Below are positions 18,005-51,789 of a stretch of 64,000 nt of DNA, piece by piece. The notes beneath the pieces were generated by a model. That model did not search any database. It saw nothing but the letters and a program-made list of their open reading frames with translations, and was not told where the DNA came from. Every line of letters starts with the position of its first letter. The stretch's first letter is position 1. Source of the stretch: Schmidtea nova (lineage: Eukaryota); NCBI GenBank assembly GCA_044892505.1, contig CM097884.1:14260001-14324000 (forward strand), given 5' to 3'. The position numbers were made by a program, and so were the translations under genes.

Positions 18005-18640
18005 ACCCTTTTGCCGTTTTCTCATCTTTCCTATACCTTGTCATTTCTATATATAAGGTGTCTGCATTTAATAGTCCCCATATCTTTTTTTGAGTTATGT
18101 CTAGTGGGTCTCCAGCTGCTAATCCGCACTCTTCTGTTGGTCTTTCGCTCGTGTCTGCATGTTTATCTGTCGTGAAACTTCTTTCCTCTGTTTTCCTACA
18201 CTTTTAATTCTTATAATGACTCCGATTTCTAAGGGCCATTCTATTAGATCGTCGTATTCTCCTTTACATAGTGCGAAAAATATTGACACATGTGTTCCTC
18301 GCCCTCTTCCATCTCCATTTGGGTAGACTTTCAATCTCATTTTACAACCGTTTTTCCATAGGTAGAATGGTGGGCTTATTAATGCTGTTTGCTGTTCGTT
18401 TCCCCATATGAATGATACATCTTTCTTTACTAGCTCCTGTATGGGTTTTGCGATTCCCGCATAATCCTTTATAAATTTCCTATAATATCCGCATAATCCG
18501 AGAAATTCTTGTATCTGTGTTATCGTTTTTCTTATTGGACATTCTTTTACTTTGTCTATATTTCTGGGATCTGGTTCCTTTCCTTTTGCAGACACTATAT
18601 GTCCCAGAAATGTCGATGTCTTGATATAAGAATACCAAAA
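18005..18640 (-). mobile_element. Ty3/gypsy RT thumb fragment fused in frame to a TRAF/MATH domain
   Basis: TFLGHIVSAKG.EPDP...EFLGLCGYYRKFIKDY (RT) joined to SPPFY...KMRLKVYPNGDGRGRGTHVSIFF...GEYDDLIEWP (TRAF MATH); C-terminal LLNADTLYIEM after a frameshift. Confidence 0.9.
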
Positions 18641-35183: not shown

Positions 35184-36048
35184 TGTTGGGTTATTGGTGT
35201 TAAGTCGGTAGTTTCTGACTCCGGTGTTCTCTTTCAATTACAAAATAAACAAGACCCAACACAATAACTTTCTTTATTTGTCAATTGATCACAACTCTTT
35301 TTATCACAAAAAGTTACGCCGGTTCTGCACTCTTCGCGTGAGGGTAGAACACCCAATGGGATATCTCCCTCTCTGACACGCAATAGATTAAGTATAAACT
35401 CTACTTTTGGTTTTCTTTCGACGTCTCCTTCAAATGTCTTCTAACGATTTGATTCACGTTGCCTACTTTTATTCTTCAATCGGTTGGCCTCGAAACTTTG
35501 ACTTTGACCCAATGGCAATTTCGGCACTTTGCTCTCCATTTTTATACCATCTCTGTGTTGTCATTCTGTCGGTGTAATTGGATATTATCGAAGCCGCTCG
35601 CTTGTAATCGGATCTGATTAGCTCTGCTTGGTCGTAACTGGATATTTGTCGTTTATGGTTTTTCCGGCTCCCCCCCGGGGCATTCAATTTAATTTGATAG
35701 TTTAATGGCCTCGCTGATGCCCCGGGTTTCCCACATCGCTCGGATCTCCTACAAGCTCGGGTTTCCCACTAGCTCGGGCTTCCTATAGAATAATTAATTA
35801 TTTTAATTAATTTGTATTTTCCAATTATTTCCTTCTGGGGGTCCCTTTTTATTTTTATATACCCATATTCGAATTCGTCTCGTTGTTTGGTATCCTCCCA
35901 TACCAGTTTCCCCCGCTTAAACTTTATTTTAATTTTTTATAAATTTTTAATTAATGTTTGAACATTAATTATTATTTTTTTCAATTTTATATTTTTATTG
36001 ATTTATGCATTTTTAAATTTATTTTCTGTGATTTTCACAACCCCAACA
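35184..36048 (-). repeat. 3-prime LTR
   Basis: About 3 substitutions versus 50925-51789 by eye. Confidence 0.97.
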
Positions 36049-36050
36049 TA

Positions 36051-36064
36051 TCTCCCCCTTTTTT
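36051..36064 (-). promoter_or_regulatory. Polypurine tract
   Basis: AAAAAAGGGGGAGA, 2 nt before the 3-prime LTR. Confidence 0.9.
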
Positions 36065-37973
36065 AAAGATTCGTCCTCGAATCTACATATACACATATTT
36101 TTGATCATAAATCCTGACAATGATTCTATAATAATAATAGTAATGATAATATCACGAATAATAGTAATAATAAGGATAATTATAGTAATAATTGCAATAA
36201 TACTGGTAGTAATGACAATGACCTAAGTATAATAATGATGATGATAATAGTATTAGTAGTACCACTATAACGATAATAATGGTAGTAATACTATTAATAA
36301 TAGTGATAATACTAGTATAATATTNNNNNNNNNNNNNNNNNNNNNNNNNNNNNNNNNNNNNNNNNNNNNNNNNNNNNNNNNNNNNNNNNNNNNNNNNNNN
36401 NNNNNNNNNNNNNNNNNNNNNNNNNNNNNNNNNNNNNNNNNNNNNNNNNNNNNNNNNNNNNNNNNNNNNNNNNNNNNNNNNNNNNNNNNNNNNNNNNNNN
36501 NNNNNNNNNNNNNNNNNNNNNNNNNNNNNNNNNNNNNNNNNNNNNNNNNNNNNNNNNNNNNNNNNNNNNNNNNNNNNNNNNNNNNNNNNNNNNNNNNNNN
36601 NNNNNNNNNNNNNNNNNNNNNNNNNNNNNNTTTTCAAAATAATTTGTTATTTTAATTTATTAATTTTAATTTAAACTTTAATTCTATAAATTAATTAAGG
36701 AAGGGAAATTGATATTCCAAATAAATTTTATTTTCATTGCCATCTCTTTTAAAGTGACGCTACTTTAATATAAATTATAAAAGAAATGGCCGCCTCAGCT
36801 TCTCAGATATCGCCGCCGCAATAAAAGGCGGTGAACTAGGATTTTTATCATTATTTTATTTCCAAATTTTGTAAGTAAATTTTTTTTGTTTTATTTACTT
36901 TATTAATATAAATTTTATGTTTTTCAATTTTATGTTTTCAATTGAAATTATAATATATTTTTTTATATACATATTTTTATATGTTTTTAAGTCAGATTAT
37001 TAACATGGAAAAACTGCAATGGCTTTATATTCATAACTTTGTTTTATTTATTTTTTTTTTCATCGATGCCATCTACAGGATTGTGTATATGAAAATCAGA
37101 GAATTATTGTTCCGAACAAGTGGAAAATAATACTGAAAAATGAATGCTTTTGCAAAAAGGCTATGTTGTAATCCGAAAAGACAGAGTGATTTGCAAAACA
37201 TGTTGGTAGATATTTATTTTATTTTATTTTTTTTGCATTAAATATATATGATTATAAATAAAAATAGTAATAACAATAAAATATATACTTTTTTAGATAT
37301 CGTTTTACAGGATAATGGTCTGTGTGTATAAGCATGTGTGTGAACGAATGTCGAATCGATAACATTATTCATTAGATAATTATTAATCACGAAAATTGTT
37401 TATGAAGAATTTTTTTTTCTTTTTTTTTTTTCGACTTTATAATTTTGTCATAACTATATTTGGTACTTTAAAATAATGAACCCAATTGACATTCGTTCAA
37501 ATTTAAAAATTGTGAAGTGCATGTTTTACAGAATAATCCTTTTCTTAGTATTATTTCTGTGTGTTTATCTCTATATTTGGAATACTTTATCGGACAAGCG
37601 ATAACTCATCAGAACATTTAGATTATTATGCCAACGATTTACTTTTGCCAATTGAAACAGAAATACAATAATAATAATAGAAATGACAATATTAATAACA
37701 ATAATAATGATAATAATAACAACACCAATNNNNNNNNNNNNNNNNNNNNNNNNNNNNNNNNNNNNNNNNNNNNNNNNNNNNNNNNNNNNNNNNNNNNNNN
37801 NNNNNNNNNNNNNNNNNNNNNNNNNNNNNNNNNNNNNNNNNNNNNNNNNNNNNNNNNNNNNNNNNNNTGTCCAGGAGAGTATGATCCCGGTGATTAAGGG
37901 CTGTTGGTTTTTATTTAGATTTAAAATTGTCATCATATAACAACAATGATACTAACAATAATAATAATAGTAA

Positions 37974-38004
<31 letters not shown>

Positions 38005-38875
38005 GATAATGACCCTAATACTACTAATGATAATAGAGTGATATTCTAATAATGGGATCACAATGTTGATGAATTTAATAATAATTGTCTTCGTCTTATG
38101 CTTTTATGATATTTATGATAATTTCATTTTATTATTATTTTATTCTGTTTTATTTATTTATTTTGTTTTTGCCAATGTTTGTTTTATTGATTCCATCATC
38201 CCTTTGACGATATAATACCAATAATAATCTGATTAATAACTGTAATATAATAATTGACAACTTTCAATCACTACTCAGGGAGATTGATTTAGAGTTTTTT
38301 GTTTTTATTTCGTCCTGAATTTTAATTATTGTATATAATGCTTATAAGGATCGAAATTTTCTTTTGATATCGCACTTATAGTGATCGTATAATGATAGTA
38401 ACATTAACAACAGTAATAATAATAATAATAATATTAATAATAATAATAATAATAACTGCCAACCTCTAATCGCTGTCCAGGAGAGTACACCCCCGGTGAT
38501 TAAAGGTTGTTGGTTTTTATTTAGCTTCAGAATTTTTATTTATTCAATTCTTTTTTGTGTTTTATTTATTTATTAAAATTTTTTTTTTTTTGTTGTTGTG
38601 GGGGTTTGACTGGTGGGCGCCATTTTAACGAACTGAGACAGAATTACTAAATTTATTTATAAATAATCACATATATAATTAATATATTTTTAGTTCATTT
38701 TGATTTCCAGCCGCTTTGCCCCATTTCGATATCTGATAATCGTTTCTTCTTTTTCATACACCACCCCGTTGATGGTCATTGTTTCCCCGACGTCGACGTT
38801 GGATGCTGAAGCTTTCCTTTTGCGATCCTCCTTTTGTTCTATTGGGCCATACTCCATCGATAATTGGATTCTTAT

Positions 38876-40138
38876 TTATTTTATGGATTCTATCCATTCG
38901 CAATTCTCTTCAATCTCCTCTAAATACATTTCAGTTGCCCATTTCAACTTTTGAATACTCTTTTCTGTTCCTGTATCTATTTCATCCACTTCCATGTTTG
39001 TCTCGTCTACGACCATTATCGTTCTTTCCGATCTGGGAATTTCAGATATTGATTCCATATGTTGTCTAGTTTTATACTCTTGCAATGAATACTTTTTTGA
39101 TGGCCCTATCTTAGGCATTGATATATCATCGATCCAAAGGTTTTCTAGTCCCAAATATATCTTCCGAATGCTTTTGACGTCCTCTAAAGCTGAGTGAATA
39201 CCCATTTGCATCTCTTCTCCATAGAGTTCCTTCATTATGGTTTTGAGCTTATACCATTCCCCTCTTCTTGTCACTCCTTTTAATTGCAACGCTTGAGCAG
39301 TAGCTAGATCCCGTATGCCATAAAGATGATTTACCCATATCCCTAGGAATTGTAATTCTGCATGTAGGTCATGTCCTACGAGTATTTTCCCGATTGTCAG
39401 TTTTTGGATTTCCTTCATCTCTTCGTACTGGTCTTTTTGATTTCGGCTTGCCACCTCCGTTATTCCATGGATGTTTGAGTTGAAATGTTTGAGTCTTCCT
39501 CTAGGTGTTAAGAAGACATTTTTCACAACTTTCCCGTAATAGTTCATAATGGCCACCGCCAAGGGAATCATCTTTCCAGTCATGCTGGTTCCATATTCGG
39601 CATCAATGAACAATATTTTGTTCCGAATTTCTTCTATACCCATTTCCCTCCGAATAAAGGACAATTTTCTTTTTAACATTTCCTTTGTTATTTGTAGGAG
39701 TTCAAGATTTTCTTTCTGCATTGGCTCCTCGCTGGGTACATCATCAATTTCGTTTTTGATCCTTGTTTCCACTACAATTGTGGCATCCTCGTTTGCTGCT
39801 CTTAATATTTTCCCGATTGCTGGCTCCTTGATTTTCCATGACGAAAGTTTTTTGATCTCCCACCATATTTGATCATTTTCGTCTAGAATTTCCACCGTCC
39901 CTCTGATGACGTGGATATAGTATTCGTCTTTATCTGATATTTTTAGTTCCTTTGTCATTTGAAATTTTGATTTTCTGTCTATAGTGAATACTTGGACTTT
40001 CATTTTTCTGTCGTCCAACCTTAGATAATTTGGAATTTGCAAATTGTTGACTATCTGGAATCTTCTTTGGCCGGCATGATTTCTCATCATCTTCAGATAG
40101 CTGTCATACGTTTCTCTGGCCCATTGTATCTGCTCCAT
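38876..40138 (-). CDS. 420-aa accessory protein with REX4/ISG20-like DEDDh 3-5 exonuclease domain
   Basis: ExoI ILFIDAE, FNSNIHGIT, ExoII ILVGHDLHAEL, IRDLA, KLKTI...ExoIII HSALEDV. Confidence 0.9.
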   Translation of the reverse strand: MEQIQWARETYDSYLKMMRNHAGQRRFQIVNNLQIPNYLRLDDRKMKVQVFTIDRKSKFQMTKELKISDKDEYYIHVIRGTVEILDENDQIWWEIKKLSSWKIKEPAIGKILRAANEDATIVVETRIKNEIDDVPSEEPMQKENLELLQITKEMLKRKLSFIRREMGIEEIRNKILFIDAEYGTSMTGKMIPLAVAIMNYYGKVVKNVFLTPRGRLKHFNSNIHGITEVASRNQKDQYEEMKEIQKLTIGKILVGHDLHAELQFLGIWVNHLYGIRDLATAQALQLKGVTRRGEWYKLKTIMKELYGEEMQMGIHSALEDVKSIRKIYLGLENLWIDDISMPKIGPSKKYSLQEYKTRQHMESISEIPRSERTIMVVDETNMEVDEIDTGTEKSIQKLKWATEMYLEEIEENCEWIESIK

Positions 40139-40323
40139 TTCTTACAAACGATTATAATTTAAATTTGAATTAATTCAATTTTGACGCTAGGACTAAGATG
40201 GAGTACCCAAAGGATACTGTCTTAGTTGGTAGCGGTATAAATAAAAATATAAAATTACCGATTTAATTGAAGTTTTCTTAGTTATTTGAAATTAATTTAA
40301 ATTTTATGATGTCTAAGTTTACC

Positions 40324-40390
40324 TTATATACCCCCCTTTTGATTTTTCTATCCCTTTTTCTACTCCCTCACTCTTTTAGTATTAGCCAAT
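40324..40390 (-). promoter_or_regulatory. Putative internal Pol II promoter for the exonuclease ORF
   Basis: ATTGG (CCAAT box) at 40386-40390 about 55 nt upstream of TATATAAG at 40323-40330, about 190 nt before the ATG. Confidence 0.45.
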
Positions 40391-40514
40391 CAAATCACTT
40401 TCCCACTTTCCCATGCCGAAGAGTGCAGATTCACATGAAACAATTATAAAAGAAAATGTCACTAGATACTAAACTATTAATCTACCATAATTGCATGCAA
40501 ATAATTGTATCTCA

Positions 40515-43500
40515 CTATACAAACGTCTCCTCGTAATCGATCCAAGGTCTCGGGGCCTCGGATTGATTCGTAGAATGTCTTTCAGTTTTTCGAATTTCAA
40601 AGATGATGACAGATATGAGAATAATGACAAATATTGTTATAATGATAATTGTTATTAATAATGTTACACATAGTAATTCATTTTCCGTAGGTGAGGCTGA
40701 TATAGTTTTATTGCTTGGATTTGACACCTTGATGTGAGCAGTTGTGATTCGCGTTGATTGATTTAACTTTTGTGGGTAACTGTCCATCTCAGTATATGAC
40801 ACTCGAACAAATTTGTCCTCTACCAAGGTTAATTGCCAAAGAGTGGAGTATTTGGCTCGCCGATAATACTTGATTTTTATTAGCACTATTTGAGAGTTTG
40901 ATTTTGACCGTAGTTGTCGGAAAGATAAGATCTTTGATTCATTTCGGTTCTCTAATATTCCTTGTACTTTTCCACAATAGTATAAAACAGCTCTCTGATT
41001 GGGGTACGTTTGACGGGTGACATTTATCGTCTGATCATACACATGAAAGATAACTCTGTTTGTTTCATTGATCAAGTTTATCGTGTGTTGACTGGAATGG
41101 ATTAGAACCCACTGATCGGTGCTGTCTGTTCCATTTTCGTACAACGACTTTTCAAAATATTGTATTTGAATATTATACATCTGAAATAATTTTAAATTAA
41201 CATATTTTATAAATGGTTTTCTGCTGTTCAGTGTATCGATAGCATGATTTTGAAAGACAGTTTTTACTTGCTGGGATTCATGAGAGTTCCAATATACATT
41301 AATTCCATTGATTACTGGTTCAATGGATACGCGGTCTTGTAGTCTTTTTGTCCATACATTGACACGTATTAGATCATGGACTCTTGTAAAATTATCTTTA
41401 AGATTTACTCGTGTTATTATCCAAGGGTATTTATAATTCATTGCTAATTCACGCGCGACATGTGTATTTTTGTTATAGTTTAATTTTACTGGGGGCTCGA
41501 AATAGTTCAGCAGATTATTTATCTCTATTTCTTCCGTCGCTTCGCAATAATAGATCCATACTATTTGGGTACATGTTGAATACACATCGATATTTTCTAA
41601 TAATGGGACTTTCTTCATTGCATATGCTGGGAATGTTCGTATTGCCGACGCACACAAAACATTGATCATCATCACTGTTGTTATCAACAACGTTTTACTT
41701 AGGTAGTTTAATTGAGTAGGGTTTTTTGTAAATTTTTGTTTAATTACTTTCTCTTTTTCGCCGTTACTTGGTTTTGACCTCAAGGGATATCTTTCTTCCA
41801 GCGGAACTTTCTTACATCGGTTTACATGAATGACAATCGTTCCCGCCTTTTTATTATTTTGTGGACGCAATTTTAAATTCGTCTCGGTTGTATCACACAC
41901 CAAATAAGGTCCTTTAAATGGTCGCTGTAGTTTGGTAGACAGCCCTTTCGTTGGCTCTGGTTTATTTATGTACACCAAATCTCCAACTTTAATATCATGT
42001 GCATGCGCACGTTTATCATAGCATTCTTTATATGCTTCTTGATTATGCCTTATTTTCAATCCCGCTTTGACCCATACTGATTGCAGTCTTTCCTGCATTA
42101 CTACTTTGTAATCGGATACGTCCATGTATTGTGAGATTGGTGGTTGAAACTTTAAGTCAATCGGCATATTGTTTCGTCGTAGGTACATAAGATAAAATGG
42201 TGTTTCACCGGTGCTTTCATTCACTGCATTTCGATATGCAAACAAACATGGCTTAATGAACAAATCCCAATCTTTTTGTTTCCTGTTTACATAAGACGAA
42301 ATCATGTTAATTAATGTTCCATTAAATCTGTCGACTAACCCATCTGTTTGTGGGTGATATGGGGATGTATTAAGTTTTAGGATTCCGAATAATTCGGTTA
42401 TAGATTTAAATAATTCGCTTTGAAAGTTTGTTCCTTGGTCTGTGAGCAATTTTCTTGGTGCTCCGTACCGAAATATGATGTTTTCTACAAATATTTTCGC
42501 AACAGTTTCTGCCTTTTGATTCTGCATTGCATATGCTTCCGGCCATTTTGTTAGGTAATCACAAAATACGATGATATATTTATTTCCATTGGTTGTTTCT
42601 GGTAGTGGACCAACAATATCCATTGCTGTCATTTCCATTGGTGCTACCGGCACGGTCATAGGTTTTAAAGGAACTTTTATTTTCCTTCCTGTATTTCGCC
42701 TGGTCAGACAAACTTCACAAGTGTGACACCATTGTCTGACGTCTTGCTCTATCGTGTCCCAGTAATATTTCTGTTTTAATCTTGATAATGTTTTTCGAGC
42801 AGATAAATGTCCTCCCAATGCCCCATCATGATACAACAACAGTAATGCTGTTCGATGTTTTGCCGGTACTACTATTAATAAGTTTTCATTTTTCACACAT
42901 TTCAACAACCCATCATGGATGACGTATTTATGTTTTTCTTCCGCAATGTGCTTCCAGTCACTTTCTCTTTTTATTGTGACAGCATGTTTCCGCAATTGAT
43001 TCAATTCAACATCGTTTTCCTGATCACCCTGTAATTCCTTCATATTATTTGCCGTTTTAATTGCCATAAATATCGTATTTTCATAATTTACTTCATTTTG
43101 AATAATATTTTCTTCAGGGATTCTCGACATTGCGTCCGCATTTCCATTTGACTTCCCCGTACGGTACTTAATTTCAAAATCGTACTCCTGTAATGCAATT
43201 GACCACCTAATCAGCTTGCTTGCCGAATCTCGATGCTTCATTAACCATTGTAATGGGTTATGATCCGTAAATACAATAAACTTTCTCCCAACCAAATATT
43301 GTCGAAAATTAGTTATCCCATATACTAATGCTAGCGTTTCTTTTTCGATTGTGGAATAATTTTTTTCATGTGGTTTTAATGAACGGCTTGCATAAGCAAT
43401 TACGTGATCTTTCTCACCTTCTACTTGCTGTCCAAGTACTGCTCCTAATGCAAAATTGCTTGCATCTGTCATCAGTATAAATGGTTTTTTGAAGTTCGGA

Positions 43501-46500
43501 CATCTCAATATTGGTTGTTTAATAAGACTCTCTTTTAATTTATCAAATGCTTCTTGTTGAGCTGTTACCCATTTGAATTTAGTCTGCTTTTTTAGCAACA
43601 TGTTTAAAGGTTGTGCTACATGCGAAAAATTCCTTATGAATTTCCTATAATAGCTCGCTAATCCAAGAAATTGTCGGACTTGATCCGCATCTTTGGGGAT
43701 CGGATACTTTTTGATCTTTTCTACATTTTCTGGGTTTGGTTGTAACCCTCTCCGTGAAATTATGTGCCCTACGTAAACAACTTCTGATTTTCCCCATTCA
43801 CATTTTGAAGGTTTTATTTTTAAATTGGCTTCTATTAGTCGTTTAAACACTATTTCCACATCTTTTAAGTGTCCCTGAAAATTGTTTGAAAATATTATTA
43901 TATCATCAATATAGACTAATGCATGTGGTATATCACGCAAAACAAAATTCATACCTCTCTGGAATGTAGCTGGTGCTCCCGTTAGACCGAATGGAAGCAC
44001 ATTAAACTCATATAGTCCTTTCCCATCTGAAAATGCCGTTTTTCTCCTGTCTTCCTCTTTGACTTTAAATTTGTTATATCCTTTGTTAAGATCGATTACT
44101 GTGAAGAATTGTACTTCTCCCATCTGATCAAACATTTCTTGCGGAACTGGTATAGGATATGTGTCTTTTCTTGTCACTTGGTTTAATTTCCGATAATCAA
44201 CACAAAATCGTAATTCACCGTCCTTCTTTTTCACTACTACTATTGACGATGAGAATGGTGATGAACTATCTCTTATTATTTTGAATTCCTTCATGGCTTT
44301 AATTTGCCGATCGCTTTCTTCTTGATGTATATATGGAATTCTGTACGGTCGTATTTTTATAGGAGTTTCATCAAGCAATGGTATTTCGTGTTCAATTATC
44401 TGAGTGAGTCCTAGATCATACTCATGTTTCGCGAATGCATTTTTATACCTTTTCAATAATGCCGCAAATTCTTGTCTTTGTGCCTCTGTTAGATCATCAC
44501 TTGTCACTTGTGGTTCTTTATAGATTTTGATATTTCTAGGTAGTTTTTGCACTTCCTCCCCTTTCATTTTTGACAGTTTTCCCAACTTTGTTTTGGGTTT
44601 CATTTGAACAGATTTTGTGCTACAATTAGCTATTCTTACTGGCACGGTTTTGTCTTTAATTTTTACTATTTCGTCACACATAGGTACGTCGTACTTTTCT
44701 ATTAGTTTTTGATTTGGTTCGAATATACACTCTTCTTCGGAAACATTTTCTACATTAGCGTAGTATATCACTTCGCTTTTTGGTGGTACTTCCAACGTTT
44801 GATTTAAAAAGACCTCTCCTGCTTCATGCACTACCTCATCAGTCTGCCTTTTTATTAATTTGCCCGTCTTTAAGTCCAGTGAGATTCCTTGTAATTGTTC
44901 CATGATATCCATGCCAATCAAACATTTGACAGGGCTTTTTCTCATTACTGATACCCAATGAATTACTTCCTGATTTCCTATATTCAACTTTACTTCTAGT
45001 TTTCCAATAATATTTAATACGTTATGCGTCATTGATTTAATAATTTTTGTTGTTGGCTTTATTTTCGCTTTTTCCTGTCTCGTTAAGAAACTCTCCGATA
45101 CTATACTGTGACTCGAGCCTGAATCCAATAACGCTTCCACTTTTCTTTCATTAAACTGTATGGATATTCTAGGTTGTTTTCCTCCAATTTCTATTGTCAT
45201 CAATGCGTAACTACATGGTAACCCAAGCATGTTCTTTCTTTCAATTTCGGCGCTTGATGGCTCAATCTTCTCTAGTTCGATTTTAATCTCATCAACTGGC
45301 TTCATTTCTCTCAACTTCTCACTTGGGTATATTGGAGCTGTTGGTATTAATGTCGGTGTGTACCATTTAGAAAGAGTGTCAATTCCTGTTAATTTTGGCA
45401 TTGGTTCAAGCAAGAACCTGGTTTCGGGTTCTATTCTACTTTTCATTATGCTCCTTCGAAAATTATTTTGCTCTGATCTGCCGCCACCGTTCTCATTATC
45501 AGGACCATTATTTTTATCCTCATGATCGCATAGTGATTCTTCGCTTTTCTGATCATTTCTCAATTGCGCTCGTACATTTGCCATTTCTTTGTATTGATGA
45601 CTTGTAATGAAGAATCTAGCCAAAAATGGAATACAACCAATCATCATTTTCCATGACCATCCGGAAATTGTATATATCCTGTGAGTGGACAATACTTGTG
45701 ATATTATCACCTTTACCGTTACTGCAATTACATAAATACCAATTAAACCTGCACAGGCTTGTCCCAAAAACATGAATTTTCCCCAAATCTTTTCCATTGT
45801 TTTGTAAGTAGCTCGTTTAAAATGATCAGGTGTCAGCAAGTATTCGTAGTTAACTTTCCCTTCTCCATTCGGCAATATGGTATCAATCATTTCTGAAATC
45901 ACGCGTTCCTTTTTTGACGGAAATAACAAATTTCTTTGGGCTTCTTCGATGTCTTCGCTCGCATACAAACCCATTTGTGCCATTTTATTCATTGATGTAA
46001 AATTTATTAAGTATTCCAAATTCGTCAATTCCAATTTATCTGGTGTTCTTACTCCTCGGTAATCTGGTAGCGCTATCCATGAATCTTGTGCTAAGCGATA
46101 TAATGGGGCTAATAATCGATTACATTGCAAGGTTTTTGGTTTAACTTGTTCCCCCAGCAGTATTCGGGTTATCGGTTCCATAAATCGTAGTTTCCCGCCA
46201 ACACTTACTGGCAATTCATTTGTACATTTCTCGTATTTTACTATTTTCACTGTAATTTCTTTGCATCGGTAACTGTACAGCGCTTCTCCAAAGATTCTAG
46301 CAAATACACCATTTTCTGAAATTAGCATGGGTGCTACTAAATTCGGGTTTGTAACCGCCATCGCCATTCGATTTCGAAGTATTTCTTTATTCAATTTACA
46401 ATCGTTCAAGATCATTTCTCTATATATGTTCTCCATGGTATTTTGGCTAAAATGAAATAAATAATCAATTTTATTATTAAAATAATGAGTTAGTTTTATA

Positions 46501-47462
46501 TCATCCCTGTGAATTCTCGTCTTCGCTTCATGTACAGTCGTTTTTGCCACATATACTCCTTTGTAATTTGTTACATAGACTGTTTGACCACATTTGCTCG
46601 TTATCTCCTTTTTAATAAAGCGCATGCTGTCCGTTGGCAAGGTTGACATTAAAACCGTCGCTGTTTGTCTTGTCCACAGTGGAATTGACCTTACTGTGCC
46701 ATTTTGTTTATAATTCATATTAAAGTTGTCTGGTCTCTCCCTAAATTGCTCTCCGGTTAACTCTTTGAAATTCATTGTTTTTAAATGAGCCAGGTTACAT
46801 ATATTGGTTTTAACATCGTAAACGAGGATTGACTCTCCCGTGTGACAACTAGTTTGCTTCATATTACAAAATGGATGAGTTTGTAGTTTTCCGGTATCAT
46901 CATCAAAAGATCCTTCGAACATTCTCAATTCGGTTAAGTATCCCTCTATTACCACTGTGTGTTTAATTATTTTCTCATTTATTTTATACGGTTCACCTTC
47001 ACAGTCACCGTCTGATTTCATCACTACCTTCACCACTAATGTTTCTCGAATTTGATGATTTAATTTCGCTTTTAATCGAATTTCAGGGCTGATTTTTAAT
47101 TCCCCCGTTTGGAAGGCTGTTAAGCAATTTTCCGGCAATACATCCACCGGTCGTGGAATGGCGTGCATTTTGATTAATGACGTATGGCTCCATTTACCAC
47201 AGAAGAATACAAAAGTGGTTCGTTTTACAATGCATTCTCTAACTTTGGTACGCCGTAAATCTGACTCTTGATTGACATAGTATTTTATTTCGTTTTCAAT
47301 CTTTAATTTTCGAGGGTATGCGTCTGGGCACTCTGACATATCAACCACTGAGTAAATTTTCCACATTTCGGTTTGTGAACAATCGTATGCCACCAATGAC
47401 GTCGTTTGTGCAATAACTGCACATAGAATAATCATCATGAACATTATCCAAGGGAATATCAT
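40515..47462 (-). CDS. env-pol: Env1-PR-RT-RNaseH-IN-Env2 polyprotein, 2315 aa
   Basis: Signal peptide + AYDC glycoprotein + TM; LLDSGS protease; YIDD RT; TDAS/EKE/TDH RNase H; HHCC + D,D integrase and GPY; second signal peptide, N-glycosylated ectodomain and C-terminal TM. Confidence 0.95.
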   Translation of the reverse strand: MIFPWIMFMMIILCAVIAQTTSLVAYDCSQTEMWKIYSVVDMSECPDAYPRKLKIENEIKYYVNQESDLRRTKVRECIVKRTTFVFFCGKWSHTSLIKMHAIPRPVDVLPENCLTAFQTGELKISPEIRLKAKLNHQIRETLVVKVVMKSDGDCEGEPYKINEKIIKHTVVIEGYLTELRMFEGSFDDDTGKLQTHPFCNMKQTSCHTGESILVYDVKTNICNLAHLKTMNFKELTGEQFRERPDNFNMNYKQNGTVRSIPLWTRQTATVLMSTLPTDSMRFIKKEITSKCGQTVYVTNYKGVYVAKTTVHEAKTRIHRDDIKLTHYFNNKIDYLFHFSQNTMENIYREMILNDCKLNKEILRNRMAMAVTNPNLVAPMLISENGVFARIFGEALYSYRCKEITVKIVKYEKCTNELPVSVGGKLRFMEPITRILLGEQVKPKTLQCNRLLAPLYRLAQDSWIALPDYRGVRTPDKLELTNLEYLINFTSMNKMAQMGLYASEDIEEAQRNLLFPSKKERVISEMIDTILPNGEGKVNYEYLLTPDHFKRATYKTMEKIWGKFMFLGQACAGLIGIYVIAVTVKVIISQVLSTHRIYTISGWSWKMMIGCIPFLARFFITSHQYKEMANVRAQLRNDQKSEESLCDHEDKNNGPDNENGGGRSEQNNFRRSIMKSRIEPETRFLLEPMPKLTGIDTLSKWYTPTLIPTAPIYPSEKLREMKPVDEIKIELEKIEPSSAEIERKNMLGLPCSYALMTIEIGGKQPRISIQFNERKVEALLDSGSSHSIVSESFLTRQEKAKIKPTTKIIKSMTHNVLNIIGKLEVKLNIGNQEVIHWVSVMRKSPVKCLIGMDIMEQLQGISLDLKTGKLIKRQTDEVVHEAGEVFLNQTLEVPPKSEVIYYANVENVSEEECIFEPNQKLIEKYDVPMCDEIVKIKDKTVPVRIANCSTKSVQMKPKTKLGKLSKMKGEEVQKLPRNIKIYKEPQVTSDDLTEAQRQEFAALLKRYKNAFAKHEYDLGLTQIIEHEIPLLDETPIKIRPYRIPYIHQEESDRQIKAMKEFKIIRDSSSPFSSSIVVVKKKDGELRFCVDYRKLNQVTRKDTYPIPVPQEMFDQMGEVQFFTVIDLNKGYNKFKVKEEDRRKTAFSDGKGLYEFNVLPFGLTGAPATFQRGMNFVLRDIPHALVYIDDIIIFSNNFQGHLKDVEIVFKRLIEANLKIKPSKCEWGKSEVVYVGHIISRRGLQPNPENVEKIKKYPIPKDADQVRQFLGLASYYRKFIRNFSHVAQPLNMLLKKQTKFKWVTAQQEAFDKLKESLIKQPILRCPNFKKPFILMTDASNFALGAVLGQQVEGEKDHVIAYASRSLKPHEKNYSTIEKETLALVYGITNFRQYLVGRKFIVFTDHNPLQWLMKHRDSASKLIRWSIALQEYDFEIKYRTGKSNGNADAMSRIPEENIIQNEVNYENTIFMAIKTANNMKELQGDQENDVELNQLRKHAVTIKRESDWKHIAEEKHKYVIHDGLLKCVKNENLLIVVPAKHRTALLLLYHDGALGGHLSARKTLSRLKQKYYWDTIEQDVRQWCHTCEVCLTRRNTGRKIKVPLKPMTVPVAPMEMTAMDIVGPLPETTNGNKYIIVFCDYLTKWPEAYAMQNQKAETVAKIFVENIIFRYGAPRKLLTDQGTNFQSELFKSITELFGILKLNTSPYHPQTDGLVDRFNGTLINMISSYVNRKQKDWDLFIKPCLFAYRNAVNESTGETPFYLMYLRRNNMPIDLKFQPPISQYMDVSDYKVVMQERLQSVWVKAGLKIRHNQEAYKECYDKRAHAHDIKVGDLVYINKPEPTKGLSTKLQRPFKGPYLVCDTTETNLKLRPQNNKKAGTIVIHVNRCKKVPLEERYPLRSKPSNGEKEKVIKQKFTKNPTQLNYLSKTLLITTVMMINVLCASAIRTFPAYAMKKVPLLENIDVYSTCTQIVWIYYCEATEEIEINNLLNYFEPPVKLNYNKNTHVARELAMNYKYPWIITRVNLKDNFTRVHDLIRVNVWTKRLQDRVSIEPVINGINVYWNSHESQQVKTVFQNHAIDTLNSRKPFIKYVNLKLFQMYNIQIQYFEKSLYENGTDSTDQWVLIHSSQHTINLINETNRVIFHVYDQTINVTRQTYPNQRAVLYYCGKVQGILENRNESKILSFRQLRSKSNSQIVLIKIKYYRRAKYSTLWQLTLVEDKFVRVSYTEMDSYPQKLNQSTRITTAHIKVSNPSNKTISASPTENELLCVTLLITIIIITIFVIILISVIIFEIRKTERHSTNQSEAPRPWIDYEETFV

Positions 47463-47564
47463 CGTCTTCCTTAGTTTTGGACTTACTCTTCCGTTTAATT
47501 GCCTTTGCGGTGCATCGTTTTCCGGTTTCTTTCTTTTCTTTATTATCGATAAATTTAATGTTTT

Positions 47565-50500
47565 CTACCCTCCACGCTCTCTCAGCCAATTACTTAAAGA
47601 CTCATTTATTAGTCGAGCCGCAATGTCAATTAACTTATCAAGCTTGTCTGACTTTGTAAATGCATGAATACTGATCTCTGAAACAACGTAGGTTAGAATT
47701 ATTAGCACTACTTCTTTATCGATCCCATTTTCGATCAACTTTTCTATTACTTCACAGTTACAAAAGCTATCCTCTTTGCCCAATTTCCGCACTACTCCTG
47801 GAAGTCTGATTTTCACTTCATCTACTATTCCTTTCAATTCCTCTTCCGTTTCTGTCTCTATTTTTAGGATTGGGTATACGACTCCAACCAAATTTCTTAT
47901 TACGTCACTTGTTTCTTCAACTTCCTGCTCTAATTTTACTAAGGTTTTCTTCATCTCATACAATGTTCTAGTCTTCGTATTCGCACTTTTTATTTCACCT
48001 TTTTCGATATTCGTATCTTCAATAACTGCCATTTCTGCTGTCTGAGCATTATTATTAACCCTCTTTTCCCCCTTATAATCATCAGTAACTATTTCAATTT
48101 CGCTTTCCTTTATTTCTTCTGTTTGCTCATCTGTGTCTGAAAATTCAACTTTGTCAAGCATCCTCGAATTATATTCTTTATTTGCGATTATGCGATTTAT
48201 CAAATACCCTTGACTTCCATTAGTACTTAAATACCCATATTCATCCAGTTCCTGTGGCACACATCCGTAGTCATATAAATATTCATCGTCATCCAATTCT
48301 TCCCCTTTATATCTCAGCACTATAATTCCATCTTTACCTAACATTTCCGCAGCTCTTTTACGCACTTTTCGAACTTTCGTACACCAGTGTTCCTCTACAT
48401 ACTCAGTTTTCCCAATATCTTCATATTCTATTGCAATTGTTAACGAATTTAACTCAACTCTATCTTTTCTAAGCTCTTTACCCAATTTTCTCATTATTCT
48501 CTTTAAACATTGTCTATATCCCGTTCTTCTAAACAAACAGGGTCGTATCGCATTAGCAAGTTCTAATTTTTCCTTTTGCCCAAATTCAGATTCCTCTATT
48601 AATTTTACTATTTCTTTAATTTCGTTTTCGTCACCAATACATAAAACATCATTTAGCTCCTTTACTATTTGCATCGGATCACTTCTTGTCATTTCACTGT
48701 TACTCATCATACTGGCTATTTGTAATTCATTTTTGTTCCCTGGTATAAGACCACAATCTATTAAATATTCATCATTTTCTAAATCTCTATTTTTAAACTT
48801 TAATTCGACTACCCAGCCTTCACATTTCTCTCTTAGTCTCCTTTTTAAATCTTTTACGCGATCATAGGCTTCACAACGACAAGTAATCACATTTTTATCA
48901 TTTTCATTAACAACATCAATAGAAATAAAATCTAACCATTTATTTTCTCGAAACGCTTTCCCAAATTTTCTCATCAATTCTTTAATTTCTTCTCTATTTG
49001 TTACATTTATTTGATAATAATTAGCACACAAATTAATCACGCCTTTCAATTTTCTCATACTTAACGACATTTGACTCAGGCTTTTAACCGATACCAATAT
49101 TTTAGATGATTCTTCCACGCTAGCTTCTAGTAATTTCTCAAGTCTTTTCATCATCATGGTAGCCTTTTCGCTTTCCAAATCGTCTTTTGTACACCCAGTT
49201 GTCGTGTCAGCTTCTGTCATGTCTTGCTGCGATCCATACATCATGTGATTATCCAATTCATCATCAGATTCAAACTTGGACATTAAACGATCTAAACGTC
49301 GACCCATTTCTTTCACTTGGTTTTCAATCTTTTCATTGAAATCATCTGATTGAACAAAAGCCACGTTGTCTGTCTGCAGTTTATCATTTTGAAATCTTAT
49401 TGATTTTTTTAATATAGGTTTCTGAAATTTGTCGACATTCCTCGGGCATGATCTAGCCATGTGTCCATACCCTCTACATGAATGACATTGAATTTGACCT
49501 TGAAGGTTCACTCTATCTCTTTGTGGGGATGGCGAAGTTGATGGAGACCTCGATCTAGCAAAACAATTCCGAGAGACATGTCCTTTCCTTCCACAATTGT
49601 AACATTGCACATTATCGTTATTACGCTGATCATTAAAATTTAGTTTATTGAAACTTTTCTCACCATTACCCTTCAACCAATCTGGCCACATTCGTTTTGG
49701 GCTTCGTTGAACGTTGTTTTTAGACCAGCATTGATTGCTGTTATGTCCCATCCTTTGACAATAATCACACTGAATTGGAGTTGGACTTTTTGGAGACCTA
49801 TTTTTGAACCAACATTGATTAACATGATGTCCTATTCGTTGGCAATGGCTGCATTGAATTGGCCTCTCTTTTTCATCAATTTGAACATTTGTTGATTTAT
49901 TTGGCTCAAATCTTTGTCTAAACGTTGGTGATGGACTAATTGATTGCTGAAGCCGATTGTTTTTGACTGGAGTTATGGACCGTTCTCTGGGTTCATTGAT
50001 GATGGCAAACGATTCTGATTTTGGCTGTGAACTTTTCAGATTTAACTCAATTTTCATCGCCTTTTTGATTAACTCATCAAAGTTATTGAAGTCCACATAA
50101 CATAATGCCTTTTTGATCTCCTTTTTGACTCCCGTTAAGAACTGGTCTTGTAGCAATTCTTTCACCTGCTTTGCCACTTCAATCTGTTCCGGCTTTACTT
50201 CGAATGCTTTCTCTGCAAGAGTAGTCAAGTGGTACGCAAATTCACTTACCGATTCCTCTGATTTTTGCACTCGATTATAGAACTTCTGCCGCATTATCCG
50301 TTTTATATCCCCTCCAATTAGTTTCGCGGCTAAGGCATCTTTCAATTTCGTCCAGTCATTCGCAATTGTTCTTTTGTCAATTTGTTGCCAGGCTTCTCTC
50401 GCTGCTCCCTTCAGATATAGTGGCAATCTTTGCACCATTGTCGCTTGGCTCCATCCATAGGCTGTGGCGTACATGTAGTAATCCGCCATAAAATCAACGA

Positions 50501-50648
50501 ATTCCACTGGATCACCGCCATACTGATTTACTGGCAGTTTCTGGCAGCTAGCATAGTCATTGCCATTGCCGTTGCTGGTGGACATGGGCGTATCATCCTG
50601 ATTGTTTGTATTACTCATTTTTGTTTCTGGTTGTTTATTACTTCTCAA
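47565..50648 (-). CDS. gag: Gag, 1027 aa, with 4 CCHC knuckles and an extended C-terminus with two ubiquitin-like domains
   Basis: Capsid-like LPLYLKGAAREAW...Q...ESVSEF...FLTG; four CX2CX4HX4C at 49450-49856; Ubl-like repeats at 48718-48930 and 48245-48450. Confidence 0.92.
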   Translation of the reverse strand: MRSNKQPETKMSNTNNQDDTPMSTSNGNGNDYASCQKLPVNQYGGDPVEFVDFMADYYMYATAYGWSQATMVQRLPLYLKGAAREAWQQIDKRTIANDWTKLKDALAAKLIGGDIKRIMRQKFYNRVQKSEESVSEFAYHLTTLAEKAFEVKPEQIEVAKQVKELLQDQFLTGVKKEIKKALCYVDFNNFDELIKKAMKIELNLKSSQPKSESFAIINEPRERSITPVKNNRLQQSISPSPTFRQRFEPNKSTNVQIDEKERPIQCSHCQRIGHHVNQCWFKNRSPKSPTPIQCDYCQRMGHNSNQCWSKNNVQRSPKRMWPDWLKGNGEKSFNKLNFNDQRNNDNVQCYNCGRKGHVSRNCFARSRSPSTSPSPQRDRVNLQGQIQCHSCRGYGHMARSCPRNVDKFQKPILKKSIRFQNDKLQTDNVAFVQSDDFNEKIENQVKEMGRRLDRLMSKFESDDELDNHMMYGSQQDMTEADTTTGCTKDDLESEKATMMMKRLEKLLEASVEESSKILVSVKSLSQMSLSMRKLKGVINLCANYYQINVTNREEIKELMRKFGKAFRENKWLDFISIDVVNENDKNVITCRCEAYDRVKDLKRRLREKCEGWVVELKFKNRDLENDEYLIDCGLIPGNKNELQIASMMSNSEMTRSDPMQIVKELNDVLCIGDENEIKEIVKLIEESEFGQKEKLELANAIRPCLFRRTGYRQCLKRIMRKLGKELRKDRVELNSLTIAIEYEDIGKTEYVEEHWCTKVRKVRKRAAEMLGKDGIIVLRYKGEELDDDEYLYDYGCVPQELDEYGYLSTNGSQGYLINRIIANKEYNSRMLDKVEFSDTDEQTEEIKESEIEIVTDDYKGEKRVNNNAQTAEMAVIEDTNIEKGEIKSANTKTRTLYEMKKTLVKLEQEVEETSDVIRNLVGVVYPILKIETETEEELKGIVDEVKIRLPGVVRKLGKEDSFCNCEVIEKLIENGIDKEVVLIILTYVVSEISIHAFTKSDKLDKLIDIAARLINESLSNWLRERGG

Positions 50649-50902
50649 TTCGTAATATGGTCGGTTTGGTACAACTTTTTCTCTTCTAAATTTTAATATA
50701 TCAATTATAAATTTTACCTTTTATTTTAATTTCAACAGTATAAATCTTTCCACAATTATCAACAAACTTTTATCAACCCTTGATTCGATTTACTGACTTT
50801 TTTCTTTTAATCAATTTCACAATTTCCAAACTTTTTAGCAACTTTTAATTTCTTTTTGCCAATAAATATTCGATTTCTTTTTGCAACGCTTCACCGACTT
50901 TG

Positions 50903-50920
50903 ATCACGTCGGGCTCACCA
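50903..50920 (-). promoter_or_regulatory. Primer-binding site, tRNA-Trp
   Basis: TGGTGAGCCCGACGTGAT, 4 nt after the 5-prime LTR; complements the metazoan tRNA-Trp 3-prime end (ATCACGTCGGGGTCACCA) at 17 of 18 positions. Confidence 0.85.
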
Positions 50921-50924
50921 AATA

Positions 50925-51789
50925 TGTTGGGTTATTGGTGTTAAGTCGGTAGTTTCTGACTCCGGTGTTCTCTTTCAATTACAAAATAAACAAGACCCAA
51001 CACAATAACTTTCTTTATTTGTCAATTGATCACAACTCTTTTTATCACAAAAAGTTACGCCGGTTCTGCACTCTTCGCGTGAGGGTAGAACACCCAATGG
51101 GATATCTCCCTCTCTGACACGCAATAGATTAAGTATAAACTCTACTTTTGGTTTTCTTTCGACGTCTCCTTCAAATGTCTTCTAACGATTTGATTCACGT
51201 TGCCTACTTTTATTCTTCAATCGGTTGGCCTCGAAACTTTGACTTTGACCCAATGGCAATTTCGGCACTTTGCTCTCCGTTTTTATACCATCTCTGTGTT
51301 GTCATTCTGTCGGTGTAATTGGATATTATCGAAGCCGCTCGCTTGTAATCGGATCTGATTAGCTCTGCTTGGTCGTAACTGGATATTTGTCGTTTATGGT
51401 TTTTCCGGCTCCCCCCCGGGGCATTCAATTTAATTTGATAGTTTAATGGCCTCGCTGATGCCCCGGGTTTCCCACATCGCTCGGATCTCCTACAAGCTCG
51501 GGTTTCCCACTAGCTCGGGCTTCCTATAGAAAAATTAATTATTTTAATTAATTTGTATTTTCCAATTATTTCCTTCTGGGGGTCCCTTTTTATTTTTATA
51601 TACCCATATTCGAATTCGTCTCGTTGTTTGGTATCCTCCCATACCAGTTTCCCCCGCTTAAACTTTATTTTAATTTTTTATAAATTTTTAATTAATGTTT
51701 GAACATTAATTATTATTTTTTTCAATTTTATATTTTTATTGATTTATGCAATTTTAAATTTATTTTCTGTGATTTTCACAACCCCAACA
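50925..51789 (-). repeat. 5-prime LTR (TATAAAA at 51281-51287, AATAAA at 51014-51019)
   Basis: Near-identical to 35184-36048; followed by the PBS. Confidence 0.97.

What the first reader, a model, noticed from the sequence alone, without database searches (positions are those of the whole stretch)
40515..41700. Second, unrelated type I membrane glycoprotein appended after integrase
Seen: after the GPY motif comes an internal signal-like TLLITTVMMINVLCASA, about 330 aa with several N-glycosylation sequons (NFT, NGT, NET, NVT, NES, NQS, NKT), a long TM (LLCVTLLITIIIITIFVIILISVIIF) and a short tail. Inference: the polyprotein threads the membrane like an alphavirus or flavivirus polyprotein (lumen-cytosol-lumen), giving a two-glycoprotein envelope such as fusogen plus receptor-binding or immune-modulating protein.
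Basis: partly seen in the sequence, partly recalled or inferred. Interest (0 to 1): 0.82.

Follow-up and report, generated by a model that had tools for sequence, protein, structure and literature searches.

The report
Second membrane glycoprotein after retroelement integrase
A young, intact 16.6-kb retrovirus-like element in an AT-rich animal genome carries, fused in frame after its integrase, a real and family-conserved type I membrane protein with a predicted fibronectin-III-like ectodomain, in addition to its known herpes-gB/chuvirus-like fusion protein, so this lineage probably displays two different surface proteins.

Summary
Window 40515-41700 (minus strand) is the C-terminal end of one uninterrupted 2315-aa ORF (47462..40515). 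After the integrase GPY motif come a 14-residue hydrophobic core ending A-S-A, a 322-aa ectodomain with 7 sequons, a 26-aa TM and a 27-aa tail ending T-F-V.

The ORF lies in a complete LTR element (35184-51789). It has 865-bp LTRs with 3 mismatches, a TAAT target duplication, a PBS and a PPT.

The gene order is gag / Env1 (Pfam Monjiviricetes_fusion, E 4e-87)-PR-RT-RH-IN-Env2 / ISG20-like exonuclease.

Env2 has no Pfam or PDB sequence match. A full HMMER scan found only four relatives (E 3e-9 to 1.5e-7). The three whose context could be read all sit in the same retroelement setting.

Eleven of 13 more distant relatives (40-52% identical in pol) keep a signal-ectodomain-TM-tail module after integrase. 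Their sequences are not alignable to Env2. Ten of 13 TM-bearing modules end in valine.

An AlphaFold model (pLDDT 57) gives three beta-sandwiches. Foldseek matches only tandem FN3 arrays and no viral fusogen.

Verdict: a genuine second membrane glycoprotein, probably an attachment or host-interaction partner of the class III fusogen. Membrane threading of the polyprotein is coherent but unproven. It is a new variant of the published GAG-ENV-POL elements.

The parts
35184..51789 (-). Whole LTR retroelement (16,606 bp), flanked by a 4-bp TAAT target-site duplication
50925..51789 (-). 5' LTR, 865 bp, TG..CA ends with short inverted termini
   Evidence: It differs from the 3' LTR at 3 positions (99.65% identical).
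50903..50920 (-). Primer-binding-site-like sequence starting TGG, 4 nt after the 5' LTR
   Evidence: read from the sequence.
47565..50648 (-). gag ORF (1027 codons as listed). It has Retrotrans_gag, four CCHC knuckles and a long C-terminal extension. It ends in TAG, in the same frame as the next ORF.
40515..47462 (-). Single uninterrupted 2315-aa ORF: Env1-PR-RT-RNaseH-IN-Env2
45507..47462 (-). Env1: N-terminal signal (residues 1-19), a class III-type fusion glycoprotein and a TM at residues 563-595 (45678-45776)
   Evidence: Pfam PF24664 Monjiviricetes_fusion, E 3.8e-87, profile positions 5-632 of 653. Hydropathy.
41763..45179 (-). Pol: protease (44886-45179), RT (43758-44234), RNase H (43182-43571), integrase with zinc domain, core and GPY motif (41763-42869)
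   Evidence: The GPY motif is at residue 1851.
41643..41696 (-). Internal signal-like segment of Env2 (residues 1923-1940), ending A-S-A
   Evidence: The homologues P0102 and P0103 also have small residues at -3 and -1.
40677..41642 (-). Env2 ectodomain (residues 1941-2262). It holds three predicted FN3-like beta-sandwiches (41358-41591, 41076-41330, 40800-41054), an S/T/N-rich stalk and 7 sequons.
40599..40676 (-). Env2 transmembrane helix (residues 2263-2288)
   Evidence: Kyte-Doolittle mean 3.48; helix at pLDDT up to 90.
40518..40598 (-). Env2 cytosolic tail, 27 aa, with a T-F-V carboxy-terminus
38876..40138 (-). Downstream ORF, 420 aa: DEDDh exonuclease (RNase_T family, ISG20/ISG20L2-like). 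It is syntenic after Env2 in relatives.
36049..36064 (-). Polypurine tract immediately upstream of the 3' LTR
   Evidence: read from the alignment.
35184..36048 (-). 3' LTR, 865 bp

Best explanation
Env2 is a genuine second membrane glycoprotein of a Ty3/gypsy-type, envelope-carrying retroelement of the GAG-ENV-POL kind.

**Shown**
- It is the in-frame C-terminal module of the Env1-Pol-Env2 ORF.
- It has a signal-like core, a 322-aa ectodomain, a TM and a short tail.
- The same slot, followed by the same exonuclease ORF, is kept in independent relatives.

**Inferred**
- After Env1 is translocated and anchored by its TM, Pol stays cytosolic.
- The hydrophobic core after integrase then re-targets the chain to the ER translocon. 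Signal peptidase cuts after A-S-A.
- The ectodomain (three FN3-like beta-sandwiches plus a glycosylated stalk) enters the lumen. The TM stops transfer, and the tail with its C-terminal valine (an ER-export or PDZ-binding type of signal) stays cytosolic.
- Pol is thereby held on the cytosolic face between two membrane anchors until the element's protease releases it.

**Most likely role**
Env2 is probably the attachment or host-surface-interaction partner of the class III fusogen Env1. This would parallel gB-type fusogens that work with a separate Ig-like receptor-binding protein. Its extreme divergence between lineages would reflect adaptation to host surface molecules.

**How sure**
That it is a real, conserved type I membrane protein of the element: about 0.85. 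That its role is attachment or host-surface interaction in partnership with Env1: about 0.45. The confidence given for the whole statement is 0.5.
For: - **Intact ORF and features:**
- **Young, complete element:** LTRs 99.65% identical, with TSD, PBS and PPT.
- **Env1 is a fusion glycoprotein:** Pfam E 3.8e-87.
- **Few direct relatives, in the same context:** an exhaustive HMMER scan finds only four Env2 relatives, E 2.8e-9 to 1.5e-7. P0103 starts in the integrase tail. P0102 and P0104 are followed by the exonuclease ORF. P0105's context was not examined.
- **Conserved synteny:** the pol-Env2-exonuclease order holds in L001, L002, L004 and L005.
- **Conserved architecture:** 11 of 13 long relatives have a signal-like segment, an ectodomain of 110-530 aa, a strong TM and a tail after integrase.
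- **Conserved C-terminus:** 10 of 13 TM-bearing modules end in Val and 12 of 13 end in a hydrophobic residue.
- **Topology:** positive charge lies before the signal core, and no other hydrophobic span occurs in Pol.
- **Fold:** the AF2 model is all-beta, three sets of about 7 strands. Foldseek returns only tandem FN3 arrays, E about 2e-8, probability 1.0. Relative P0009 has weak Ig-domain hits in the same slot.
- **Precedent:** a glycoprotein fused after Pol in one polyprotein is known from Atlas virus (PMC9094657).
Against: - There is no experimental or transcript evidence.
- No SignalP or DeepTMHMM run was possible. Cleavage rests on the -3/-1 rule and the length of the hydrophobic core.
- The model is of medium-to-low confidence (mean pLDDT 56.6, 5-sequence alignment). 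Foldseek TM-scores are low (0.16-0.39).
- No Pfam fn3 hit appears even at E = 10.
- Sequon count is not above compositional expectation.
- Post-integrase modules of different sub-lineages are not demonstrably homologous (hhalign not significant). The slot may therefore hold unrelated proteins with different roles.
- In the window, gag is separated from this ORF by an in-frame stop, so how the ORF is translated is unknown.
- Some class III fusogens act without a partner, so a second protein is not required for entry.
Confidence: 0.5

Rival explanations
1. Env2 is an accessory cell-surface protein rather than a virion attachment protein. Possible roles are superinfection exclusion or receptor masking, modulation of host defence, or an adhesion-like molecule sent to cell contacts through its C-terminal motif to favour cell-to-cell transfer.
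For: - The FN3/Ig-like array and a [S/T]-x-V type C-terminus are typical of host adhesion and receptor proteins (family knowledge).
- The module varies greatly or is replaced between lineages.
- Relative P0009 shows CD47-like/Ig_3 weak hits in this slot.
Against: - No host protein was detected as a relative among 1.84 billion representatives, so there is no sign of recent host capture.
- The data in hand do not separate this from the attachment role.
Confidence: 0.27
2. The module is mainly a topological device. It would be a second membrane anchor that holds Pol at the membrane for packaging, with an ectodomain under little specific constraint.
For: - Architecture is conserved while sequence is not.
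- Ectodomain length ranges from about 110 to 530 aa.
Against: - Within the Env2 sub-family, the ectodomain is recognisably conserved over about 370 residues at 23-37% identity, with shared motifs.
- An anchor alone would not need a folded 320-aa ectodomain or a conserved C-terminal valine.
Confidence: 0.1
3. Env2 is made from its own spliced or internally initiated message, not by threading of the Pol polyprotein. The in-frame fusion would be incidental. This rival concerns the route of expression only and is compatible with any of the proposed roles.
For: In L001 the homologue P0102 is a separate ORF with its own ATG, overlapping the end of the upstream ORF. Retroviral env genes are usually expressed from spliced RNA (established knowledge).
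Against: - In the window there is no Met between the integrase end and the hydrophobic core. The only Mets lie inside the core.
- The fusion recurs in P0103 and in the long relatives.
Confidence: 0.2
4. The segment is non-functional read-through sequence or an assembly chimera.
For: There is no Pfam or PDB sequence match. The window's exact proteins are not on record elsewhere.
Against: - 416 open codons at 34% GC.
- Composition is uniform with the rest of the ORF.
- Protein-level relatives exist in four independent metagenome contigs. Synteny could be read in two of them, L001 and L002, and is the same there.
Confidence: 0.03

Closest known systems
GAG-ENV-POL errantivirus-like Ty3/gypsy elements with HSV/gB-type (chuvirus-like) ENV, reported in Nematoda, Bryozoa and Platyhelminthes (Chary & Hayashi 2026, PMC13524379; it cites Sacco et al. 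2022, which is not held)
   Same: Ty3/gypsy Pol with a GPY integrase, a class III-type glycoprotein placed between gag and pol, and young multi-ORF-intact copies with LTRs and a tRNA PBS.
   Different: That paper mentions no membrane protein after integrase and no exonuclease ORF (text searches). Here Env1, Pol and Env2 form one ORF.
Atlas virus of Ancylostoma ceylanicum (Belpaoviridae), with a single Gag-Pol-Env polyprotein (PMC9094657)
   Same: A membrane glycoprotein region is fused in frame after Pol, without a stop, in a young intact element. This implies an internal signal and membrane threading of a retroelement polyprotein.
   Different: Atlas is a BEL/Pao element whose appended region is a phlebovirus GN-GC (class II fusogen). 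Here the appended protein is FN3-like with no fusogen features, and the fusogen sits upstream of Pol.
Herpesvirus entry machinery: gB fusogen plus a separate Ig-like receptor-binding glycoprotein (established knowledge, not tested here)
   Same: A class III fusogen combined with a distinct beta-sandwich type I membrane glycoprotein.
   Different: No sequence or fold match to any herpesvirus receptor-binding protein was returned. This is an analogy only.
Flavivirus, pestivirus and alphavirus structural polyproteins (established knowledge)
   Same: Alternating signal and stop-transfer segments would place successive domains in the lumen and the cytosol.
   Different: Those are RNA-virus polyproteins processed by signal peptidase and viral serine proteases. 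Here the polyprotein belongs to a reverse-transcribing element with an aspartic protease, and the topology is inferred only.
Bdelloid rotifer Vesta/Juno/TelKA LTR elements with extra ORF3s (PMC5408684)
   Same: LTR retroelements that add TM-containing ORFs and a DEDD-superfamily exonuclease ORF downstream of pol.
   Different: The rotifer exonucleases are DEDDy/RNase D-like, whereas this one is DEDDh/ISG20-like. The rotifer env is paramyxovirus F-like and lies downstream of pol. Their TM ORFs are short (about 220 aa).

Membership tests
Ty3/gypsy (Metaviridae) LTR retroelement | LTRs with TG..CA ends, a 4-6 bp target duplication, a PBS after the 5' LTR and a PPT before the 3' LTR | tested here: met
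Ty3/gypsy (Metaviridae) LTR retroelement | Gag with CCHC knuckles; Pol in the order PR-RT-RNaseH-IN with H2C2 zinc domain, rve core and GPY/F motif | tested here: met
GAG-ENV-POL gB-type env-carrying elements | A class III (gB/chuvirus-like) glycoprotein with signal and TM, located between gag and pol | tested here: met
   PF24664 at E 3.8e-87 over residues 7-652. The link to the gB-like class rests on PMC13524379.
Type I membrane glycoprotein with cleavable signal (for Env2) | Positively charged n-region, hydrophobic core of 7-15 residues, small residues at -3 and -1 | tested here: met
   (rule-based check). No SignalP-type predictor was available.
Type I membrane glycoprotein with cleavable signal (for Env2) | A single C-proximal TM helix followed by a short cytosolic tail | tested here: met
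Type I membrane glycoprotein with cleavable signal (for Env2) | N-glycosylation actually used | not testable with these tools
   Seven sequons are present, but the count is not above compositional expectation.
Fibronectin type III domain (Pfam fn3) | A sequence-profile match to fn3 | tested here: not met
   No fn3 hit at E up to 10 in Env2 or its four relatives. No PDB profile hit either.
Fibronectin type III domain (Pfam fn3) | A seven-stranded beta-sandwich fold, here in tandem | tested here: inconclusive
   The AF2 model has mean pLDDT 56.6 and 50-80 in the domains. Foldseek hits are all FN3 arrays with probability 1.0 but TM-scores of 0.16-0.39. Internal repeat signals are in register but weak.
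Viral fusion protein, class I, II or III (for Env2) | A fold or profile match to a known fusogen; fusion peptide or loops; coiled-coil or a class II/III domain layout | tested here: not met
   No such hit in Pfam, PDB or BFVD. The model is all-beta sandwiches without long helices apart from the TM.
Class I PDZ-binding C-terminus ([S/T]-x-hydrophobic-COOH) | The motif sits at the extreme C-terminus of the cytosolic tail | tested here: met
   The window ends T-F-V. The same pattern occurs in P0002, P0004, P0011, P0102 and P0104, and Val is the last residue in 10 of 13 modules. Binding to a PDZ domain, or an ER-export function, is not testable here.
Atlas-type Belpaoviridae Gag-Pol-Env | BEL/Pao Pol and a phlebovirus GN-GC homologue after Pol | tested here: not met
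   The Pol domains and nearest relatives are Ty3/gypsy type, and there is no phlebovirus glycoprotein family hit.

The most novel reading that the evidence does not exclude
This lineage of reverse-transcribing elements makes a membrane-threading Gag-Env1-Pol-Env2 polyprotein with a two-component surface. One component is a conserved class III fusogen. The other is a hypervariable, exchangeable slot of beta-sandwich (FN3/Ig-like) type I proteins after integrase, which sets cell or host specificity. The conserved C-terminal valine motif would direct trafficking. That would be a retroelement counterpart of gB plus receptor-binding-protein entry systems, expressed with a flavivirus-like polyprotein topology.
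Probability: 0.3. Interest if true: 0.8.

Novelty: new variant of a known kind. Interest (0 to 1): 0.62.

Why it matters
Envelope-carrying Ty3/gypsy elements are currently described as carrying one captured fusogen, either F-type or gB-type. A conserved second surface protein would change that picture in several ways.

- Env2 is fused to integrase and followed by an ISG20-like exonuclease. Some lineages would then have a more virus-like, multi-component envelope than assumed.
- The post-integrase position would be a slot that evolves very fast or is exchanged. That is a candidate determinant of cell or host specificity.
- A reverse-transcribing element would be using signal and stop-transfer threading of its Pol polyprotein.
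- There is a practical consequence for annotation. Pipelines that stop Pol at the integrase, or that look for env only as a separate ORF, will miss such modules.

Tried and rejected
- **Word-index protein searches of Env2**, alone and as a region of the full ORF, found nothing.
- **Exact-sequence look-ups** of the window's ORFs and of three neighbouring ORFs found nothing on record. The host species was not identified.
- **The search for related loci** found no relatives with Env2 or small alignments, in metagenome contigs (both scans used) or in viral contigs. The 5-sequence alignment was too divergent to derive patterns.
- **Single-sequence AlphaFold** was uninformative (pLDDT 37).
- **Profile-profile comparison** of Env2 with the post-integrase modules of P0002-P0015, and between those modules, was not significant. 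The exception was a shared protease-like stretch in some relatives. I therefore do not claim homology across the whole slot.
- **Sequon enrichment** was rejected as independent evidence.
- **Env2 as a fusogen** was rejected.
- **Recent host-gene capture** is not supported.
- **dN/dS** was not computed. The window has only one copy, and the available relatives are too divergent (23-37% identity).
- **Literature gaps:** Sacco et al. 2022 and the eLife supplements are not held. I cannot exclude that a post-integrase membrane protein is mentioned there.
Full report
**1. The observation**

The finding lies on the minus strand. It is the C-terminal end of one uninterrupted 2315-aa ORF, window 47462..40515.
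- GPY at residue 1851.
- A hydrophobic segment at residues 1923-1941, ending C-A-S-A before I-R-T.
- Seven sequons between residues 2024 and 2251.
- A very hydrophobic TM at residues 2263-2288 (Kyte-Doolittle 19-residue mean 3.48).
- A 27-aa tail.

Only four segments of the whole ORF exceed a 19-residue hydropathy of 1.6. They are the N-terminal signal, the Env1 TM (peak at 569-587), the post-integrase segment and the final TM. A weaker stretch after the Env1 TM reaches only 1.07. Nothing in the 1300-aa Pol region qualifies as a membrane span.

The sequon count is the weakest part of the observation. The count is 7 in 322 aa against 4.3 expected from shuffles of this N/S/T-rich stretch (P = 0.125).

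**2. What surrounds it**

The ORF sits in a complete LTR retroelement, window 35184-51789, 16,606 bp, on the minus strand. Its hallmarks:
- 865-bp LTRs differing at 3 positions.
- TG..CA ends with short inverted termini.
- A TAAT target-site duplication.
- A TGG-initiated primer-binding-like site 4 nt after the 5' LTR.
- A polypurine tract abutting the 3' LTR.

The gene content is as follows.
- **gag** (50648..47565): Retrotrans_gag plus four CCHC knuckles and a long C-terminal extension.
- **The 2315-aa ORF**: carries Env1, PR, RT, RNase H, IN and Env2.
- **Env1**: residues 7-652 match Pfam PF24664 Monjiviricetes_fusion at E 3.8e-87, and PR, RT, RNase H and integrase (H2C2, rve) follow it.
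- **A 420-aa DEDDh exonuclease ORF** (40138..38876): RNase_T family. Its nearest solved relatives are ISG20L2 and ISG20.

None of the three ORFs contains an internal stop or frameshift. The gag ORF ends in TAG, and the next ORF is in the same frame. Whether that stop is read through cannot be told from sequence.

About 2.8 kb of very AT-rich, low-complexity DNA with two N runs lies between the exonuclease ORF and the 3' LTR. It was left untouched.

**3. Is Env2 real and conserved?**

Env2 (residues 1900-2315) has no Pfam family and no PDB sequence relative. The two word-index searches were blank.

The exhaustive HMMER scan of 1.84 billion cluster representatives returned only four proteins, at E 2.8e-9 to 1.5e-7. 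Three of the four could be placed in context, and each sits in the same retroelement setting. P0105's contig was not retrieved.
- **P0102** (410 aa) spans signal to TM. On its contig it is a stand-alone ORF that overlaps the end of the upstream ORF and is followed by a homologue of the window's exonuclease.
- **P0103** begins inside the conserved integrase tail, so it is fused like the window's copy.
- **P0104** has the C-terminal half with the TM and is followed by the exonuclease.

A whole-ORF search gave metagenome ORFs of 2627-3865 aa with 40-52% identity in Pol. These encode gag, the PF24664 glycoprotein and Pol in a single frame. All have 300-980 aa after the integrase.
- In 11 of 13 of them this extension has a signal-like segment, an ectodomain of about 110-530 aa, a strong TM and a tail of 27-130 aa.
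- Counting the 13 modules that have a strong TM (window, ten long relatives, P0102 and P0104), 10 end in valine and 12 end in a hydrophobic residue. Six of them have the [S/T]-x-V pattern. For a residue of about 6% frequency, 10 of 13 is far beyond chance, although shared descent inflates the figure.
- The pol-module-exonuclease order is kept on L001, L002, L004 and L005.

The ectodomains of the sub-lineages are not demonstrably homologous to each other or to Env2 (hhalign). Elements whose exonuclease is about equally distant from the window's (32-36% identity) have an Env2 that is either 24-30% identical (L001, L002) or unrecognisable (L004, L005). The slot is therefore conserved, while its content evolves very fast or is exchanged.

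**4. What Env2 looks like**

With the 5-sequence alignment A1, AlphaFold gives a medium-to-low confidence model. Mean pLDDT is 56.6, 50-80 in the ectodomain and up to 90 in the TM. The ectodomain is all-beta, in three blocks of about seven strands, at Env2 residues 59-136, 146-230 and 238-322. A disordered S/T/N-rich stalk and the TM helix follow.

Foldseek against the PDB returns only tandem FN3 arrays: fibronectin repeats, the CD45 ectodomain, LAR, contactins, Tie2 and IFNAR. E-values start at about 2e-8 with probability 1.0. TM-scores are low (0.16-0.39), as expected when inter-domain angles differ.

The viral structure library returns only generic FN3/Ig arrays, almost all from phages plus a few from large DNA viruses (an algal virus and a fish iridovirus). 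No envelope glycoprotein of an animal virus appears.

Three further points bear on the fold.
- Domain-versus-domain profile comparison gives weak, in-register signals only.
- There is no sequence-level fn3 match.
- Relative P0009 has weak Ig_3 and CD47-V-set hits in the same slot.

I therefore treat "three FN3/Ig-like beta-sandwiches" as probable (about 0.65), not established. Nothing suggests a fusogen.

**5. How it most likely works**

*Shown:* the order of hydrophobic segments, the charge distribution (net +3 in the 15 residues before the signal core), the 14-residue core and the small residues at -3 and -1. The last feature is also present in P0102 and P0103.

*Inferred:*
- Env1 is translocated and anchored by its single TM, and Pol stays cytosolic.
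- The post-integrase core restarts translocation and is cut by signal peptidase.
- The Env2 ectodomain enters the lumen and is glycosylated, and the TM stops transfer.
- The tail's C-terminal valine acts as an ER-export or PDZ-binding type of signal. This rests on established knowledge of such motifs and was not tested.
- Pol would be tethered between two membrane anchors until the aspartic protease frees it.

A glycoprotein fused after Pol in one polyprotein has a precedent in Atlas virus (PMC9094657). The gag-env-pol order with gB-type ENV is published for Nematoda, Bryozoa and Platyhelminthes (PMC13524379). That paper states that chuvirus-like glycoproteins are structurally gB-like.

My preferred role for Env2 is an attachment or host-surface-interaction partner of the Env1 fusogen. 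The rivals are an accessory cell-surface function, a mere membrane tether for Pol, and separate expression from a spliced message. They are listed with their weights in the Rival explanations section.

**6. Comparison and novelty**

The element passes all tested membership features of a Ty3/gypsy GAG-ENV-POL env-carrying element. Env2 fails the sequence test for Pfam fn3 and the tests for any fusogen class. It is not an Atlas-type GN-GC.

In the literature I could search, no paper describes a membrane protein after integrase in these elements, nor an ISG20-like exonuclease ORF. Sacco et al. 2022 and the eLife supplements were not available, so prior mention cannot be excluded.

I rate it a new variant of a known kind, with interest 0.62.

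**7. Limits**

- The host was not identified. The window is from an AT-rich metazoan genome, with an Es2 homologue and a TRAF-type MATH domain nearby.
- No sister copy was available for dN/dS.

Noticed in passing
window 38876-40138 (-): An intact 420-aa ORF directly after Env2 encodes a DEDDh exonuclease (Pfam RNase_T). Its nearest solved relatives are ISG20L2 and ISG20. Homologues follow the post-integrase module on L001, L002, L004 and L005. An interferon-stimulated-gene-like RNase carried by a retroelement seems unusual. The rotifer elements described in PMC5408684 carry DEDDy, not DEDDh, enzymes.
   Followed up: partly
window 47565-50648 (-), gag residues about 480-1027: Gag has a roughly 550-aa extension after its zinc knuckles. 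The extension contains internally repeated segments shared with relatives. It gives a weak Rad60-SLD (ubiquitin-like) hit (E 0.006) and a weak Bcl-2 family hit over the last 100 residues (E 0.012). Both are below Pfam cut-offs.
   Followed up: no
window 47463-47567 (-): gag ends in TAG, and the Env1-Pol-Env2 ORF follows in the same frame after a 34-codon spacer. Relatives P0002-P0009 carry gag, Env1 and Pol in one continuous ORF. Read-through, re-initiation or splicing cannot be distinguished from sequence.
   Followed up: partly
window 36049-38875: About 2.8 kb lies between the exonuclease ORF and the 3' LTR. It is 18-25% GC, rich in AAT/ATT-type repeats, and holds two N runs (36325-36630 and 37730-37867). 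It also has an 83%-identical 66-nt direct repeat at 37868-37933 and 38474-38539. No convincing ORF was found. The N runs were not filled.
   Followed up: no
P0001, P0002, P0003, P0008 (metagenome relatives): Some relatives carry extra aspartic-protease-like stretches. One lies between Env1 and the main protease in P0001, P0002 and P0003. Another lies after integrase, ahead of the membrane module, in P0001, P0002 and P0008 (and, by BLAST and profile comparison, probably P0003). The window's element lacks these.
   Followed up: partly
P0009 residues about 2673-2749: The post-integrase module of this relative gives weak Ig_3, CD47 V-set and Ig_5 hits (E 1.5e-5 to 8e-4). This suggests that different lineages hold different Ig-superfamily-like ectodomains in the slot.
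   Followed up: partly
window 18119-18610 (-): A 158-aa ORF has a TRAF/meprin MATH domain (E 2e-17). Its 5' part overlaps a 77-aa match (44% identity) to the RT-RNase H linker region of the element's Pol. It may be a retroelement fragment next to, or fused with, a MATH exon.
   Followed up: no
window 29068-30288 (-) and 53064-53477 (+): A 406-aa single-exon ORF matches the nuclear protein Es2 (E 1e-42) and is a host gene. A 137-aa ORF with DUF7041 lies about 1.3 kb outside the 5' LTR.
   Followed up: no
L004 16872-18689: On the metagenome contig of relative P0006, a protein-primed type B DNA polymerase gene (DNA_pol_B_2) lies just beyond the element. It is possibly part of a Maverick/Polinton-like element.
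   Followed up: no
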